Assembly (NCBI RefSeq): GCF_016432865.1
Contig: NC_067399.1
Span: 141,732,001 to 141,796,000 of the forward strand
Direction: 5' to 3'
Length of the DNA: 64,000 nt
Origin: Antechinus flavipes
Taxonomy: Eukaryota
In this document: positions 8,828 through 44,615 of the stretch, in pieces
How the letters are laid out: each line of letters begins with the position of its first letter
How positions within the stretch are numbered: the stretch's first letter is position 1
Program-made: the position numbers and the translations under genes
Notes under the pieces: generated by a model
Told to the model about the DNA's origin: nothing
Databases searched by the model: none
What the model saw: only the letters and a program-made list of their open reading frames with translations

Positions 8828-9571
8828 NNNNNNNNNNNNNNNNNNNNNNNNNNNNNNNNNNNNNNNNNNNNNNNNNNNNNNNNNNNNNNNNNNNNNNNNN
8901 NNNNNNNNNNNNNNNNNNNNNNNNNNNNNNNNNNNNNNNNNNNNNNNNNNNNNNNNNCTCCCTCCTTTCCCTCCTTACTTCCTCCATCCCTCTCTCGATT
9001 CTTTCTTTTTCTTTCTTTCCTTCCTTCTTTTCATCCCTTCCTCCCTCCTTTCTTTCCTTAATTCCTCNNNNNNNNNNNNNNNNNNNNNNNNNNNNNNNNN
9101 NNNNNNNNNNNNNNNNNNNNNNNNNNNNNNNNNNNNNNNNNNNNNNNNNNNNNNNNNNNNNNNNNNNNNNNNNNNNNNNNNNNNNNNNNNNNNNNNNNNN
9201 NNNNNNNNNNNNNCCTTTCTTTCCTTAATTCCTCNNNNNNNNNNNNNNNNNNNNNNNNNNNNNNNNNNNNNNNNNNNNNNNNNNNNNNNNNNNNNNNNNN
9301 NNNNNNNNNNNNNNNNNNNNNNNNNNNNNNNNNNNNNNNNNNNNNNNNNNNNNNNNNNNNNNNNNNNNNNNNNNNNNNNNNNNNNNNNNNNNNNNNNNNN
9401 NNNNNNNNNNNNNNNNNNNNNNNNNNNNNNNNNNNNNNNNNNNNNNNNNNNNNNNNNNNNNNNNNNNNNNNNNNNNNNNNNNNNNNNNNNNNNNNNNNNN
9501 NNNNNNNNNNNNNNNNNNNNNNNNNNNNNNNNNNNNNNNNNNNNNNNNNNNNNNNNNNNNNNNNNNNNNNN
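8828..9571. other. Three N-runs (8828-8957, 9068-9213, 9235-9571) within a CT-rich simple/tandem repeat
   Basis: N runs flanked by (CCTT)/(CTTT)-like sequence. ORF-track entries here are artefacts. Confidence 0.9.
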
Positions 9572-13849: not shown

Positions 13850-14100
13850 GACAGCGCTAGGCCAGCAATCAGGAAAATTCATCTCCCTGAATTCAAATCT
13901 GCCCTCAGACACTTATTAGCTATGGGTGGACACTGGGCAAATCACTTCCTTTTGTTTGACTCAGTTTCCTAATCTGCAAAAGGAGCTGGAGAAGGAACTG
14001 GCAAACCACTCCAGTATTTTTGCCAAGAAAATCCCAAAAAAGGGTCATAAAGAGTTGGACGTGAATGAAAGTGATTGAACAATAGCAACAACAACCGCAT
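13850..14100 (+). mobile_element. MAR1-type CORE-SINE with RTE/BovB-like tail (further copies at ~10780-10980-, 16935-17190-, 25555-25790-, 28490-28705-, 30430-30660-, 32945-33160-, 49660-49870-, 53055-53270+, 56045-56275+)
   Basis: tRNA-like head (gaattcaaatctgccctcagacac), CORE block, and tail ctggagaaggaactggcaaaccactccagtatttttgccaagaaaatccc...tgaacaatagcaacaac. Confidence 0.75.
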
Positions 14101-14714
14101 CAGTTCTGTGCCAGGATCTTTGCCTAGGGAGGAACAGTACAAAAATGACAAAATAGGGAGTTGAAACCCAAGATAAGTAGAGAGATAATAAGAGCACTTG
14201 TTTGCCCTTATGAGTTCAAGTCATCTGGCCCAGATGAACTACATTCCAAAGTACTGAATGAGCCAGCAGATGTGCTTGCTGACCCAACATCAATGACCTT
14301 TGTAAAGACTGTGAACAATGAGGGACGTGCTGCAAGACTAGGCAAAGCAAATGTCCCCATTTTCAAAAAAAGAATAGAGAATTCAGCCTGCAAACTATTG
14401 GCCAGTGAGTTTGACTTCTTCTATTTCTGGAAAAATTCTAGAATAGATTATAAAAGGGATATCTTGGGAACATTTAGAAAAGGAAATGGTAGAGAGATAG
14501 TCTGGATCCATCAAGGTCAATCCAGAAAAAAACTTTGTTTTCTTTTATTAAAAGAGTAGATCAGCAGGATGAGATAGATATAGTTTGCCAAGATTTTAGA
14601 AAAACATTTGACAAAATCTCTTACACTCTTCTTGCACACAAATTGAAGAGGTATGGTGGATTCAGATTTGGTTAAGTGGACAAATTGAAAGAGTGGTCAT
14701 TAAAGGTGTTTCAA

Positions 14715-14829
14715 GGGGCAGCTAAGTGGTACAATGGATAGAGCACCTAGCCCCTGGAGTCAGGAGGATCTGGATTTAAATCCAGACACCTTTCTAGCTG
14801 TGTGACCCAGGGCAATTTAACACATTTGC

Positions 14830-14863
<34 letters not shown>
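14715..14863 (+). mobile_element. WSINE1/SINE1-type tRNA SINE with A32 tail
   Basis: ggggcagctaagtggtacaatggatagagcac...ggagtcaggagg head and a long poly(A) at 14832-14863. Confidence 0.85.
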
Positions 14864-14866
<3 letters not shown>

Positions 14867-14989
14867 GGTTCAATGTCATCTTAACCTTGAAATTTTCTTG
14901 GCAGAAAGCCTAGGAGAGTCTGTGCTTGACGATGTGCTATTTAACTTTTTTTTTTTTTAAATTTAATGCCTTAAATAAAGGCATAGATT

Positions 14990-15265
14990 TTTTGTTGTTG
15001 GATTTGAGTTCATTTCTGTTGTATCTAGTTTTTCATGACTGCTTTGGGGTTTTGTAAGAGGTTTTTGTTGTTGTTGTTTTGGCAAAGATATTGCAATAGT
15101 TGCTATTTGCTCCTCCAGCTGGTTTTAGAAATTGGGAAAGTGAGGCAAACAGGGTTAAGTGACTTGCCTAAAGTTATTCAGCTATTAAATGTCTGAAACA
15201 GGATTTGAACTCAGGAAGATGATTGCAAGACCAATACACTATCCAGTAAGCCACCTAAATGCCCC
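14990..15265 (-). mobile_element. MAR1-type SINE with a 13-bp TSD
   Basis: Flanked by AAAGGCATAGATT at 14977-14989 and 15266-15278. The SINE head GGGGCA begins at 15265 on the minus strand. Confidence 0.85.
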
Positions 15266-15643
15266 AAAGGCATAGATTATATTATCAAGTTTGTAGATAA
15301 CACCAAGGAGAGATAACTAGCATGTTAAATGACAATGAGGATCCAAAATTATCTTGTCAGATTAGAATACTGAGCCTAATTTGAAAAGATGAAATTTAAT
15401 AGAGATAATATAAAGCTTCATAATTATGCTCCAAGAAATCAACTTCACATGGAGAAGGAATGATTAAATAGCACTGAGTCAGTAGCTACAACAGACTGTT
15501 CTGCTTTCACCTAGCTCTCCTAGCCATCCTCAGATGAAGGAACTCCTGTTGGGAAGAAATCAGCCGTCCCCACCAACCAACAGCGACTAACAGGACATGC
15601 AAGCTGACTTGGCTGAAGCTGCAAAGCTTCCTGAGGAAGCAGC

Positions 15644-15774
15644 ATGTGCCAGGCAAGTAAAATCATTACTACCATCTTAACTGGCATCTCAGACCCTGAA
15701 GATCTTCATCTTCAGACCCTGATGGAGACAGCCTGGGTTCTTGTACTCAAGACCCTTGGAAATAGATCATTGGA
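15644..15774 (+). pseudogene. YBX3: Probable 5' part of the YBX3-like retrocopy (decayed N-terminal coding region)
   Basis: gaggaagcagcATG TGC CAG GCA AGT AAA ATC ATT ACT ACC (MCQASKIITT) resembles YBX3 MSEAGEATTTT after CpG decay. It joins 16135 once the L1 and its TSD are removed. Confidence 0.4.
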
Positions 15775-16120
15775 TCTTGTGATGAAGAGAACCATCTACA
15801 CCCAGAGAGAGGATTGTGAGGACTGAGTGTGGATCACGACAGAACATTCTCACTCTTTTTATTGTTGTTCACTTGCATTTTGTTTCCTTACTCATTTTTT
15901 CCCTTTTTGATCTGATTTTTCTTATTCAGCAAGATTATTGTATAAATATGTTTACATATTGGATTTAATATATTTTAACATGTATAACATATATTGGATT
16001 GCTTGCCATGAGGGGGAGGAGAAGGTGGGAAAAATTTGGAACACAAGGCTATACAAAAATCAATATTGAAAAATTATCTATGCATATGTTTTGAAAATAA
16101 AAAGCTTTTTAAAAAGAGAG
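15775..16120 (+). mobile_element. 5'-truncated L1 (3' UTR) with a 14-bp TSD
   Basis: AATAGATCATTGGA at 15761-15774 and 16121-16134 flanks an L1 3' end with AATAAA and an A-rich tail. Confidence 0.85.
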
Positions 16121-16134
16121 AATAGATCATTGGA

Positions 16135-16396
16135 GCTTTTCATCTGATTTGGAACCTCCAAAACCTCTAGCTTAGTGTCATTAGCTATCATCCTACAAAG
16201 AAACCCCCTTTGGAGATGAAACCTGACAACTGCTCCTGCAAGTACTATAGCTATAGCTACTGCATATTCAGAAAAGAAGTATCTTGTCCCCAAAGTTCTT
16301 GGAACTGTCAACTGGTTCAACATTAGAACTGATCATTTCCTTGATAGAAAAGACATTAGAGAAGAGGCATTGAAAACCGCCACTGCATCCCAATGA
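16135..16396 (+). pseudogene. YBX3: Y-box (cold-shock domain) processed pseudogene fragment, YBX3-like
   Basis: 16271-16366 translates as EKKYLVPKVLGTVNWFNIRTDHFLDRKDIREE, versus recalled YBX3 [33 protein letters not shown]. No introns are present, and TGA stops lie at 16217 and 16394. Confidence 0.75.
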
Positions 16397-19382
16397 CTGT
16401 CAGACCTTTTCATCCCATTTGAAAACTTCCATAAATGTTGTCTCCCCCTTTAGAATGTGAGCTCTTTGAGAGCAGGAACAGTCTTACTTCTTTGTTTGCA
16501 TGCCCATTGCTTAGCATAATGCTTTGTGCATAGTAAGTGCTTAATAAATGTTTTATTTATTCATTCAAAAAAATTGTCTCAGGTAATATTGAGATATAGT
16601 GTTCAGGTGACAGTCCCACTGTTCTCTGCCCCAATTAGACTCATCTGAATCATGGCATTCAGTTCTAGGGAGCTACATTTTAGGAAAGAGATTGGAAAGT
16701 TAGACAGTGTCCAGAGGAATGCCCAGTGTGGGGAAGAGTCTTAAAATCAAGTCTCCTGAGGACCAATTTAGGCTAGAGATGTTTTAGTTTGGACTTAAAA
16801 AGAACATCACCTCTGTCTTCAAGTTGAAAGGTTGTTGACAAAAAGAGTCAATAGATTTATTATTTTTGTCCCAGGGGACAGTAAAAAGGAGATTTAGATA
16901 GGATATAAAGAAAAAGGAACTTCATAACAATTTTTGTGGTTGTAAGTCACTTCTGCCTTACCATGAACTTATTTGTTCTTGGCAAAGCTCTTAAGAGTGG
17001 TTTGCCATTTTCTTCTCCAGATCATTTTACAGATGAAGAAACTGAGGCAAAAAACAAAATCTGAGGGTTAAGTAATTTACCTGGATTCATACACAGCTAA
17101 ATAAGTGTTTCAGGACAGATTTGAATTTATGAAGAGGAGTCTTCCTGTTTCCAAACCCAGTGCTCTATTCACTTCATCTACTAGCTGCCTCCATAAAAAT
17201 TAGAATTATTCAAAAGAGGAAAGGGTTGCCTCAGAGGTAAGGAGTTACTCCTCATTAAAGATGTCAAACAAAGGTTGGATGCTATTTGTTGGGGGATATT
17301 GTAGAGGGGATTTTTGTTCAGTTATGACCTATACTATGGCTCTTCACCTGCTGCTTGCCTAAGATCCTAGTTTCATCCCCTCAATCATTTTGTTTTTGTT
17401 TGTTTTTGTCTTGTAATGTCTTATTAAAGGGCACAGAATGGAAGTACAGTAGGTTCAGTCTGCATCGAGAATTGCTATCCCAGAGCTTGAATAAACAAGG
17501 TAAATCCATGTGTTGAAGGACATTAAATGTCAGACAGAGAGAATTGAGGTTTCAGGAAAGTTACTGTGTATAGAGGAAGAGGGATCAGCTCAGGGAAAAA
17601 TTGGAGAGAGAGAGAGAACATCCAGTAATCCAGTCATACAGGGCTTTACCAACAATAATCCACATTTGTAAAGCACTTTAAGGTGTACAAAGGAAGGGAA
17701 GAAATAGACATTTATTAAGCACCTCCTAGGAGCCAGGCATTACGCCAAATATTTTACAAATATTTTATTTGACCCTCACAACAATCCTGGGGAGAAAGGT
17801 ACTCGTGTTAACATTTTTTAAACTGAGGCAACAGAAGCTAAGTGGTTAAATGATTTGTTTAGCATCACACAGCTAATAAGTATCTAAATCTAGATTTGAA
17901 TAGATTTGAATTCCTGATTTCATGGCCAATTCTCTACCCAATGGATAATGAACAGTGTAGGGTATCTATATATACCTATTTATTTAGAGTATATGTTGTC
18001 TTCTCCACTAGGAATTTAGGAATTATTATTATTTTTCATCAAATATCTTAAACAAAAGTAAAAGGGAAGGGGAGTGAGCATTTATATGGCACTTACTATG
18101 TGCCTTACCCTGGGCTAAGCACTTTATCATTACCTAATTTGCTTGTCACAACAACCCTTGGAGGTAAATAGTATGATGATCCATTTTACAGTTAAAGAAA
18201 GTGAAATTAAGTCACATTGCTAGTAAGTATCTGAGGCTAGATTTGAACGTAGGCTCTCTGGACTCCAGTCCTATATTCATTGCACCACCTAGTCTTTTTC
18301 CTTTCCTCACCTCAAAGAGACAGATAAACTCTGAGAGGAAGATAATGGTATATTTTTCCTATTTTTACATTTGAAGAAACTAAGGCCCACAAATTAATAT
18401 AGTAAATGTCAGAATCAAGATAAATCAGGCAAAAAGGATCGCAGCTAGTGCAGGGATCATAGAAGCAGAAAAAGGCAAAATCTTTTTTTCAAAAAAAATT
18501 TTTTTAGCAAGCTATATTTGCTGCCTGGTGACTGAATATGAAGGAGAGATAATAAGATGTGGAACCAGGAAAGACTGCCTTTGAATCCTTCCTCAGATAC
18601 TTATTGGCTGTGTGATCCTAGCAAGTCCCATGCTCTTTAGACATCAGTTTCTCCATTTGCAAATAAGGGGAGAGGCTACTCTCTGTGACCTCAAAGGACC
18701 TTTCCAGGTCTAAATATATGAATTTTTAAGAAAGGTCCACCGAATTCTGGCTTCTAATAGGAAAATAGCAAGTTTGACTTTGGACACGTTGAGTTAGAAA
18801 TGATGGCACAACACCCACCTAGACAGGAGTACCCCTTGGATGCCAGTCTTGTGTTTGCCATAGACTTCTTCCTTCTCTCCTTTGTGACGTGATAGGGTTG
18901 ACAAGGTTCCAGTAGAATGAGTCTCGTTTCTAGTTAGGCCTTCCTCAGGGCTCGGAATGTTGCTTGCAATTCTGAGATGTCCCATGCTCTCCCCGGCCTG
19001 GGATTTCCCAACAGCCAAACACCTTTCCTACTTTCCATCTTGCTGCTGGTGCCCTACCTGTGCTGGGTCTCCAGGACAGGAATAACCTTGACTTGGGACT
19101 CCATCTCAGGCCTTGAGAACCAGTCACGCTCCATCAGCCCCCCGTGACTGGCTTACACATGACTGCTAATTCTGGAATCTATGCCTTCTGGAAGATCAAG
19201 GGATGGGCTGGCCCTCTATGTGGGGGACTGAGTGGGGAGGAAGGGGAACCCTAAGTACTCAGAAAAGGCCTCTCCGACCCCTGCAGGTGGATGCTCACTG
19301 ATGTGAGGGGCAGCTGGTCCCGGCACTGCCTCGGATGATATCGATGGAAATTAAACAGGAGACAAGGGGAAAGGTGAGGGGT

Positions 19383-38682: not shown

Positions 38683-38925
38683 AATGGTGCAGTGGAGAGA
38701 GCACTGGGCATGGAGTTAGAGAGCTCTTAGTTCAAATCCTGCTTCAGACATCTATGAGCTGTGTGATCTTAGACAAGTCACTAAGCTGCTGTCTGCCTCA
38801 GCTTCATCCTCTGAAGAATGGGGATAAAAATGGTACTCACTTCTCAGGATCTCTGTGAAGATAAAATGAAATAATGTTGATATAAGATACTTTGTTAATC
38901 TTAAGGTGTTGTATAAATGTTAGCT
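38683..38925 (+). mobile_element. MIR-type CORE-SINE
   Basis: agtggagagagcactgg...gttcaaatcctgcttcagaca...gacaagtcact...ctgcctcagcttc...tataaatgttagct (MIR head, core and tail). Confidence 0.75.
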
Positions 38926-38929
38926 CCTG

Positions 38930-39875
38930 GTACTGATGTTGCTGGTCCTATAACTATTTGTACTGATACTTTTATCACTGCCACTACTACTATTATTAGT
39001 AATACTATTTCTGCTGTTATTATCACCACTACTGCTACTTCTACTATTGCTGTTGCTACTACTATTACTTCTATTGTTGCTACTTCTACTGCTGCTGCTG
39101 CTTCTACTACCACCACTACTATTATTGCTACTATTACTACTTCTATTGTTGCTACTTCTACCATACAACTGCTATTGCTTCTATTACTAACTACTTCTGC
39201 TACTGCTTCTTCTACTATTACTATTATTGTTACTATTACTACTTCTATTGTTATTTCGACTTCTGCTACTACTTCTGCTTCTTCTACTATTACTATTATT
39301 GCTACTATTACTACTTCTATTGTTATTTCTACTTCTGCTACTACTTCTGCTTCTTCTACTATTACTATTATTGCTACTATTACTATTTCTATTGTTGCTA
39401 CTTCTGCTGTTGTTGCTACTTCTACCATACTACTGCTATTGCTTCTATTACTACTTCTGCTACTGCTTCTTCTACTATTACTATTATTGCTACTATTACT
39501 ACTTCTATTGTTGTTACTTCTACTTCTGTTACTACTTCTGCTTCTTCTACTATTACTATTATTGCTACTATTACTACTTCTATTGTTGCTACTTCTGCTG
39601 TTGTTGCTACTTCTACCACACTACTGCTGCTGCTTCTACTACTACTTCTATTGCTGTTGCTACTACTGCTGCTACCGCTATTGCTTCTTCTACTATTTCT
39701 GTTACTGCTGCTACTATCACAACTACTGCTATTAATACTACTACTTCTACTACTGCTGCTGCTGCTATTGGCACCACTACTGCTATTGCTACTATTACTA
39801 CTTCTATATGCTGCTGCTGCTACTACTACTTACTACCACTCCAGTTATTGCTACTCCTACTATACAACACCTACT
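38930..39875. repeat. ~0.95 kb degenerate trinucleotide array (ACT/GCT/TCT/ATT/GTT) with a 72-bp higher-order unit
   Basis: The 24-mer gcttcttctactattactattatt recurs at 39205, 39277, 39349, 39465 and 39540. Confidence 0.95.
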
Positions 39876-41266: not shown

Positions 41267-41433
41267 NNNNNNNNNNNNNNNNNNNNNNNNNNNNNNNNNN
41301 NNNNNNNNNNNNNNNNNNNNNNNNNNNNNNNNNNNNNNNNNNNNNNNNNNNNNNNNNNNNNNNNNNNNNNNNNNNNNNNNNNNNNNNNNNNNNNNNNNNN
41401 NNNNNNNNNNNNNNNNNNNNNNNNNNNNNNNNN
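41267..41433. other. N-gap in SFTPC intron 1
   Basis: 167 Ns. Confidence 0.95.
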
Positions 41434-44483: not shown

Positions 44484-44615
44484 NNNNNNNNNNNNNNNNN
44501 NNNNNNNNNNNNNNNNNNNNNNNNNNNNNNNNNNNNNNNNNNNNNNNNNNNNNNNNNNNNNNNNNNNNNNNNNNNNNNNNNNNNNNNNNNNNNNNNNNNN
44601 NNNNNNNNNNNNNNN
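44484..44615. other. N-gap within a purine-rich repeat between SFTPC and BMP1
   Basis: 132 Ns flanked by GA-rich sequence. Confidence 0.95.

What the first reader, a model, noticed from the sequence alone, without database searches (positions are those of the whole stretch)
15480..16396. Hidden intronless YBX3-like cold-shock-domain retrocopy, missed by the ORF track
Seen: the stop-to-stop frame 16220-16393 (58 codons, no ATG) reads NLTTAPASTIAIATAYSEKKYLVPKVLGTVNWFNIRTDHFLDRKDIREEALKTATASQ. Known (recalled): YBX3 reads ...[50 protein letters not shown], and EKKxL fits YBX3 better than YBX1 (DKKVI) or YBX2 (DKPVL). The match crosses positions where Y-box genes have introns, so it is mRNA-derived. 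Removing the L1 and its TSD joins it to an upstream ATG (15644, MCQASKIITT versus MSEAGEATTT). Unusually, the 5' end of the mRNA survives while the 3' end and poly(A) appear lost. The RNP1 motif (GYGFI) is destroyed, so it is probably non-functional as protein.
Basis: partly seen in the sequence, partly recalled or inferred. Interest (0 to 1): 0.7.

Follow-up and report, generated by a model that had tools for sequence, protein, structure and literature searches.

The report
Decayed Y-box mRNA piece with L2 tail
A dead, intron-free fragment of a Y-box (cold-shock-domain) gene transcript sits here fused to the 3' end of an L2 LINE, and the same fusion occurs at another, unrelated locus, so it looks like one copy of a small mRNA-headed, L2-tailed retroposon family rather than a lone pseudogene.

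Summary
The frame 16220-16393 reads as quoted. It is truly Y-box derived: PDB phmmer E=3e-6, tblastn with a fish YB-1 E=7e-10, and a DNA alignment 12 SD above shuffles. I mapped exons on a goby ybx1 gene. The match runs without a break across three conserved intron positions (window 16286|7, 16347|8, 16375|6), so it came from mRNA. The L1-type insert (15775-16120) and its 14-bp duplication are real.

Y-box homology stops in exon 4 (16396), and about 40 nt later the last ~130 nt of an L2-type LINE tail begin (16437-16567).

A Logan contig (L001) with unrelated flanks carries the same head, the same stop point, the same spacing and the same tail. It also shares derived residues at invariant domain positions. 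The scan's first readers noted this architecture at two other places of this genome (s1-189114, s1-215360, unchecked).

Best reading: a decayed copy of a chimeric Y-box-mRNA/L2-tail retroposon, non-coding. The claimed 5' part (ATG 15644) and the YBX3 assignment could not be tested and have no support from L001. Interest is moderate.

The parts
16228..16396 (+). Head: intronless Y-box (YBX) mRNA fragment, from the end of the Ala/Pro-rich N-terminal domain through the first half of the cold-shock domain into early exon 4. Decayed, with a 3-nt deletion in the RNP1 motif and deletions of 6 and 7 nt.
   Evidence: Intron-site equivalents 16286|16287, 16347|16348 and 16375|16376 come from the goby ybx1 exon map.
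16397..16436 (+). Short linker between the end of Y-box homology and the recognisable L2 tail. Its length is the same (41-42 nt) in L001. Its 3' half is probably already L2 sequence.
   Evidence: local match 12/14, reached by 14 of 500 shuffles
16437..16567 (+). L2-type LINE 3' terminal region, containing AATAAA and ending in TTCATTC, followed by A7 at 16568-16574.
   Evidence: nhmmer finds about 15 other copies of this tail in the window, all starting at model position 45-56 or later. The aligned copies have a different upstream sequence of their own. 74% identical to the L001 tail. The name L2 rests on my recollection of the L2 3' consensus.
15775..16120 (+). Later insertion of an L1-type 3' fragment with an A-rich end.
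   Evidence: four other copies in the window at 69-72%. L1 identity was not verified against ORF2.
15761..15774 (.). Target-site duplication of the L1-type insert, left copy (14 nt).
16121..16134 (.). Target-site duplication of the L1-type insert, right copy (14 nt, identical).
15480..15760 (+). Membership unresolved (my estimate about 0.35-0.4). Unique within the window.
   Evidence: No homology. GC-rich relative to the flanks.
16135..16227 (+). Stretch between the L1-type insert and the head. No detectable homology to L001 or to fish YB-1 cDNA. Membership unresolved.
   Evidence: (42% identity in a forced alignment)

Best explanation
The locus is a decayed, non-coding copy of a chimeric retro-element. 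Its 5' part (16228-16396) is a reverse-transcribed, spliced Y-box gene mRNA fragment, probably YBX3-like. It runs from the end of the N-terminal domain to codons P-R-K of exon 4. Its 3' part (about 16420/16437-16567) is the terminal ~130-150 nt of an L2 LINE. Inferred origin: an L2-type reverse transcriptase, which needs its own 3' tail to start, began on an L2-tailed RNA and switched template onto a Y-box mRNA. Alternatively a fused transcript was copied. The resulting chimera kept the tail that L2 machinery recognises, and was copied again to other loci. The window copy and L001 are two descendants of one already-mutated master. Later an L1-type 3' fragment with a 14-bp target duplication landed about 95 nt upstream of the recognisable head. 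Shown: Y-box origin, absence of introns, the L2-type tail directly downstream, and the same junction at an unrelated locus. Inferred: template switching, mobilisation by L2, and family size.
For: Y-box origin. mRNA origin: on the goby ybx1 gene, intron 1 lies in the codon after K-K-V-I, intron 2 in the R of F-I-N-R, and intron 3 after V-H-Q. In human YB-1, exon 1 encodes the A/P domain and a published exon-2 primer covers N-V-R-N-G-Y-G-F-I (PMC4130533). Mouse exon 3 encodes part of the domain (PMC13441540). The window sequence is continuous across all three sites. Tail. Common origin with L001: window 16228-16567 aligns with L001 1622-1957 throughout, at 64% in the head, 60% in the linker and 74% in the tail. 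Y-box homology starts at the same YB-1 residue (~20) in both copies, ends at the same P-R-K codons, and lies 41-42 nt before the tail in both (my reading). The flanks are unrelated. Shared derived residues occur at positions invariant from arthropods to vertebrates: F-N-V to F-N-I, G-F to H-F, D-T to D-I. First readers noted the same architecture at two other places of this genome (unchecked).
Against: Only one independent second copy was seen by me, and its organism is unknown. The two other loci are unchecked AI notes. No target-site duplication was found for the element. There is no pol III A box, only a box-B-like GGTTCAA that comes from the W-F-N codons, so how a master would be transcribed is open. 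The V-to-I change could be a parallel CpG decay. The head is more diverged between the copies (K2P 0.50) than the tail (0.34). L2 identity of the tail rests on a recalled consensus.
Confidence: 0.65

Rival explanations
1. One reading: a single L1-mediated processed pseudogene of YBX3. Its 5' end (5'UTR from about 15480, ATG 15644) is intact, it is split by a later L1 fragment, and its 3' half and poly(A) were removed by deletion or by an unrelated L2/MIR-type element lying next to it by chance.
For: The spacing from ATG 15644 to E-K-K is 267 nt once the insert and one duplication copy are removed, close to the ~255 nt I recall for YBX3. GC is raised in 15500-15776. The Thr/Ile-rich run after the ATG could be a decayed Thr run (a recalled feature of YBX3). 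Note s1-215360 speaks of an mRNA 5' part.
Against: L001 has the same end of Y-box homology, the same spacing to the same tail and shared derived residues, but unrelated flanks. Chance adjacency cannot give that. No measurable homology of the upstream piece to anything was found. The upstream extension could still be true within the chimeric model, as a longer, less 5'-truncated copy.
Confidence: 0.15
2. An L2 subfamily carried the Y-box fragment inside its own 3'UTR (a captured sequence), and both loci are ordinary 5'-truncated L2 copies.
For: It would explain dispersal without a separate promoter, and the identical junction.
Against: Both copies lose mutual homology at the same point, 16216-16228 and L001 ~1612-1622, which random 5' truncation would rarely give. 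Nothing upstream of the head resembles the L2 3'UTR sequence seen upstream of the tail in other copies in the window. Only two copies were compared.
Confidence: 0.1
3. Independent, recurrent template switches between L2 RNA and abundant Y-box mRNA produced each locus separately, or the Y-box likeness is chance.
For: Y-box mRNAs are very abundant. The tail is less diverged than the head, as expected if each part merely resembles its own source.
Against: Identical start, end and spacing in two copies, and shared derived residues including a multi-nucleotide Gly-to-His codon change. Chance is excluded.
Confidence: 0.05

Closest known systems
Processed pseudogenes (retrocopies) of YBX1/YBX3
   Same: Intronless copy of a spliced Y-box mRNA, decayed and non-coding.
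   Different: Only about 170 nt of coding sequence. No 3' half, 3'UTR or poly(A) of the mRNA. It ends in an L2 tail. The same truncated unit recurs at another locus with shared mutations.
LINE-tailed non-autonomous retroposons (MIR/CORE-SINEs with an L2 tail; stringent-type SINE/LINE pairs, reviewed in PMC3747384)
   Same: A 3' end borrowed from a LINE that needs its own tail, SINE-like size (~340 nt), and dispersed copies.
   Different: The head is a pol II mRNA coding fragment, not a tRNA or 5S gene. No internal pol III promoter was found.
snoRTE of the platypus (a snoRNA-derived short retroposon with an RTE tail, cited in PMC3747384)
   Same: A cellular RNA fused to a stringent-type LINE tail and retroposed without a pol III promoter.
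   Different: The head is an mRNA fragment, the partner is L2 rather than RTE, and the host is a marsupial-like genome.
Chimeric retrocopies made by template switching (for example U6-L1 or U6-mRNA chimeras, PMC4476161)
   Same: Two RNAs joined head to tail during reverse transcription, with the RNA copied first lying at the 3' side.
   Different: Those are L1-made, mostly single events with poly(A). Here the 3' partner is an L2 tail and the chimera seems to have been copied again.

Membership tests
Y-box (YBX) gene-derived sequence | Significant similarity to the Y-box N-terminal flank and cold-shock domain. | tested here: met
   PDB phmmer E=2.9e-6. tblastn with L002 YB-1 E=7e-10. DNA alignment z about 12. 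Pfam CSD itself not reached.
Processed pseudogene / retrocopy | No introns at the parent gene's intron positions. | tested here: met
   Three intron positions mapped on the goby ybx1 gene L004 are crossed without interruption at 16286|7, 16347|8 and 16375|6. The human exon 1/2 layout agrees.
Processed pseudogene / retrocopy | The mRNA's own 3'UTR and poly(A) at the 3' end. | tested here: not met
   Y-box homology ends in exon 4 at 16396. An L2-type tail follows.
Processed pseudogene / retrocopy | Flanking target-site duplication. | tested here: inconclusive
   None found for either candidate 5' end. Old age could have erased it, and L2-type insertions often lack clear ones.
LINE-tailed non-autonomous retroposon family | 3' end homologous to the partner LINE's 3' end. 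| tested here: met
   16437-16567 matches about 15 other tail copies in the window. The copies aligned carry a different upstream sequence of their own. The label L2 comes from a recalled consensus.
LINE-tailed non-autonomous retroposon family | Several dispersed copies with the same head-tail junction and unrelated flanks. | tested here: inconclusive
   One verified second copy (L001) of unknown organism. Two more in this genome are known only from unchecked notes. No further copy in the window.
SINE in the strict sense | Internal pol III promoter (A and B boxes). | tested here: not met
   Best A-box match is 7 of 9 and lies downstream of the B-like site. The B-like GGTTCAA scores 6-7 of 9.
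YBX3 (as against YBX1 or YBX2) as the parent | Paralogue-specific residues before the domain, and the N-terminal domain sequence. | not testable with these tools
   Both copies have E-K-K-[YF]-L. YBX1 of human and fish has D-K-K-V-I. No YBX3 sequence could be retrieved: searches gave only invertebrate Y-box proteins or teleost YBX1.

The most novel reading that the evidence does not exclude
This genome, and at least one other, holds a so far undescribed family of L2-mobilised retroposons whose head is the 5' part of a Y-box (YBX3-like) mRNA. That would be a pol II mRNA fragment turned into a SINE-like element by acquiring an L2 tail. Copy number could be in the tens to hundreds, given three sightings in the roughly 40 Mb that the scan has annotated. 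The W-F-N codons would supply a box-B-like motif.
Probability: 0.35. Interest if true: 0.6.

Novelty: new variant of a known kind. Interest (0 to 1): 0.4.

Why it matters
L2-type LINEs recognise their own 3' tail, so they are thought to make almost no processed pseudogenes. Their known passengers have tRNA-type heads (MIR). A coding mRNA fragment that gained an L2 tail and was then copied to several loci would show how a stringent LINE can still mobilise host mRNA sequence. It would also add an mRNA-headed type beside snoRTE. For annotation, such copies should be masked as a repeat family, not counted as independent YBX retrocopies. The locus itself has no sign of function.

Tried and rejected
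- Pfam on the frame, on P0003 and on the upstream ORFs: nothing.
- Word search with the 58-residue frame: no candidates.
- Whole-library phmmer: only P0003 was relevant, plus two low-complexity proteins and a triple-CSD protein.
- Word search with P0004: only invertebrate Y-box proteins.
- Word search with L002: only teleost YBX1. No marsupial or YBX3 sequence was obtained, so the parent could not be assigned.
- Exact look-ups of three window ORFs in public assemblies, to reach orthologous loci: not on record.
- P0003 is a singleton cluster.
- Fugu isoform look-up: not on record.
- Viral and prokaryotic genome collections: no relatives. The metagenome scan gave only a fish YB-1 transcript.
- Rfam on 14000-18500: only sub-threshold chance hits.
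There is therefore no read, RNA or orthologue evidence.
- The L1-removed joined model was not searched as one sequence.
- An alternative short transcript ending in an intronic L2 was considered. It was rejected because homology continues about 21 nt past the exon 3/4 junction.
- The 25-nt direct repeat 16133-16157 / 16403-16427 was considered as a target duplication of the head. It was rejected: the second arm is part of the element shared with L001, and no poly(A) precedes it.
- Literature searches found no description of a Y-box-headed retroposon. That is not proof of absence, and Repbase/Dfam could not be consulted.

Full report
**Observation.**
- Pfam does not reach it.
- phmmer against all PDB chains returns eight Y-box entries as the only clear hits: YBX1 E=2.9e-6, zebrafish YB-1 1.8e-5, YBX2 4e-5. 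The alignment runs from the residues before D-K-K-V-I to V-H-Q-T-A.
- A metagenome scan later supplied a real vertebrate YB-1 cDNA, L002. It is a goby-like transcript of 298 aa with a Pfam CSD hit at E=5e-25.
- tblastn with L002 aligns YB-1 residues 20-70 to window 16235-16387, 46% identity, E=7e-10.
- At DNA level, window 16271-16396 aligns to CDS 91-232 with score 60. Shuffles give 21 +/- 3.2, maximum 35.

The likeness is real, not chance.

**mRNA origin.** The word search with L002 gave teleost YBX1 proteins. One of them (P0130, Eucyclogobius newberryi) was fetched with its gene, L004.

Exon mapping with splice sites gives three intron positions:

| Intron | Position in the protein | Window equivalent |
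|---|---|---|
| 1 | after the first base of the codon following K-K-V-I | 16286\|16287 |
| 2 | inside the Arg codon of F-I-N-R | 16347\|16348 |
| 3 | after the Gln codon of V-H-Q | 16375\|16376 |

The window sequence is continuous at all three sites, with conserved bases on both sides. At the third site nine bases are identical across the exon 3/4 junction.

The layout is old. In human YB-1, exon 1 encodes the A/P domain and a published exon-2 primer covers N-V-R-N-G-Y-G-F-I (PMC4130533). Mouse exon 3 encodes part of the domain (PMC13441540). The fragment therefore derives from spliced mRNA.

**The L1-type insert.** 15775-16120 is flanked by a perfect 14-nt direct repeat, 15761-15774 and 16121-16134. 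It has four other ~70% copies in the window and an A-rich end. I did not verify L1 identity against ORF2 (one search showed no helpful ORF).

- Y-box homology ends at 16389-16396, the codons P-R-K of exon 4. Nothing downstream resembles the rest of the CDS.
- From about 16437 to 16567 the sequence is the 3' end of a common interspersed repeat. nhmmer finds about 15 other copies in the window, and all begin at model position 45-56 or later, which corresponds to window ~16437.
- In the copies aligned, the sequence upstream of that point differs from the element's linker and head.
- By my recollection of the L2 3' consensus this is the L2 LINE tail. It contains AATAAA, ends in TTCATTC, and is followed by A7.

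So the missing 3' end is in fact a junction: Y-box mRNA fragment, about 40 nt, then an L2 tail.

**A second copy.** The whole-library phmmer search found one relevant relative, P0003. It is a 66-aa ORF on a 1957-nt Logan contig, L001.
- L001 1622-1957 aligns to window 16228-16567 along the whole length: head 64%, linker 60%, tail 74% identity.
- In both copies Y-box homology starts at the same YB-1 residue, about 20.
- In both it ends at the same P-R-K codons, 41-42 nt before the tail.
- The flanks upstream are unrelated. Relaxed blastn and shuffle-controlled local alignments give nothing. The two loci are therefore not orthologous.
- The two copies share replacements at positions that are invariant from arthropods to vertebrates. 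These are F-N-V to F-N-I, the Gly before Phe in G-Y-G-F to His (both copies have the codon CAT), and D-T to D-I.
- The V-to-I change might be parallel CpG decay. The Gly-to-His change needs at least two identical base changes.

Both copies therefore descend from one already-mutated chimera. The organism of L001 is unknown to me, and I had no reason to take it for human.

**Earlier notes of this scan.** First readers recorded the same architecture at two other places of this genome:
- s1-189114: [quoted passage not shown].
- s1-215360: "YBX3-like mRNA 5' part fused to an L2 3' tail".

They are unchecked and I could not read those windows. They agree with a dispersed family, and they are leads, not support.

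**Mechanism.**
- Shown: a spliced Y-box mRNA fragment joined to an L2-type tail, the same junction at an unrelated locus, decay to non-coding, and a later L1-type insertion upstream.
- Inferred: an L2-type reverse transcriptase primes on its own 3' tail (stringent recognition, PMC3747384). It started on an L2-tailed RNA and switched to a Y-box mRNA. The chimera, still carrying the tail, was retroposed again.
- Not explained: how a master copy was transcribed. There is no A box, only a B-like GGTTCAA supplied by the W-F-N codons. Read-through transcription would be enough for a low-copy family.
- Age: the copies differ by K2P 0.45 overall, so the events are old.
- No target-site duplication of the element was found.

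**The upstream piece (15480-15774 plus 16135-16227).**
- No homology to L001.
- No homology to the fish cDNA. This test is weak, because the 5'UTR and N-terminal domain are not conserved at that distance.
- No homology to anything else in the window or to Pfam.
- Hints in its favour: GC is 44-52% against 31-39% in the flanks. The ATG-to-E-K-K distance is 267 nt after removing the insert and one duplication copy, close to what I recall for YBX3.

I put membership at about 0.35-0.4. If true, this copy is simply less 5'-truncated than L001. I did not search the joined, L1-removed model as one sequence; the pieces were compared apart.

**Paralogue.** Both copies have E-K-K-[Y/F]-L. YBX1 of human and fish has D-K-K-V-I. 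I recall that YBX3 has E-K-K-V-L, but I could not retrieve any YBX3 sequence. "YBX3-like" is plausible and untested.

**Limits.** There is thus no evidence on expression, on orthologous copies, or on an empty L1 site. The run table shows that six coded organisms hold parts of the stretch, but at about 1x coverage this cannot be turned into ages. N runs were left alone. Repbase and Dfam were not available, so the family may already be catalogued.

**Verdict.** The locus is a real but dead Y-box mRNA fragment, best read as one copy of a chimeric Y-box-head/L2-tail retro-element. It is ordinary as a locus and moderately interesting as a type.

Noticed in passing
window 16133-16157 and 16403-16427: A 25-nt direct repeat, 80% identical, 270 nt apart. 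One arm lies just after the L1-type insert's duplication and the other lies in the linker of the element. Probably chance; rejected as a target-site duplication of the head.
   Followed up: partly
window 15100-15260 and about 16960-17010: MIR/CORE-type SINE-like stretches flank the locus. The reads tool's filter tripped at 17018-17054, which lies next to the second one. Nothing from those places was sent on.
   Followed up: no
window 8828-8957, 9068-9213, 9235-9571, 41267-41433, 44484-44615: Five runs of N (912 bases in all).
   Followed up: no
window 16078-16323 (-): An 81-aa ATG ORF antisense to the head, spanning the end of the L1-type insert. A mechanical ORF, not on record in public assemblies.
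   Followed up: partly
window 38917-39875: An earlier first-reader note places a triplet-repeat array about 1 kb upstream of SFTPC, so the window lies in the SFTPC neighbourhood. Not examined.
   Followed up: no
L002 (JGI contig Ga0314697_10062768) 144-1040: A complete goby-like YB-1 mRNA sits in an environmental metatranscriptome. It was useful here as a real vertebrate Y-box cDNA.
   Followed up: yes
P0004 (ENA, 322 aa): A protein with three tandem Y-box-type cold-shock domains from an unidentified eukaryote. Unrelated to the finding.
   Followed up: no
L001 1-120: The Logan contig with the second copy starts with another L2-type tail in the same orientation, so this tail is a common repeat in that genome too.
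   Followed up: no
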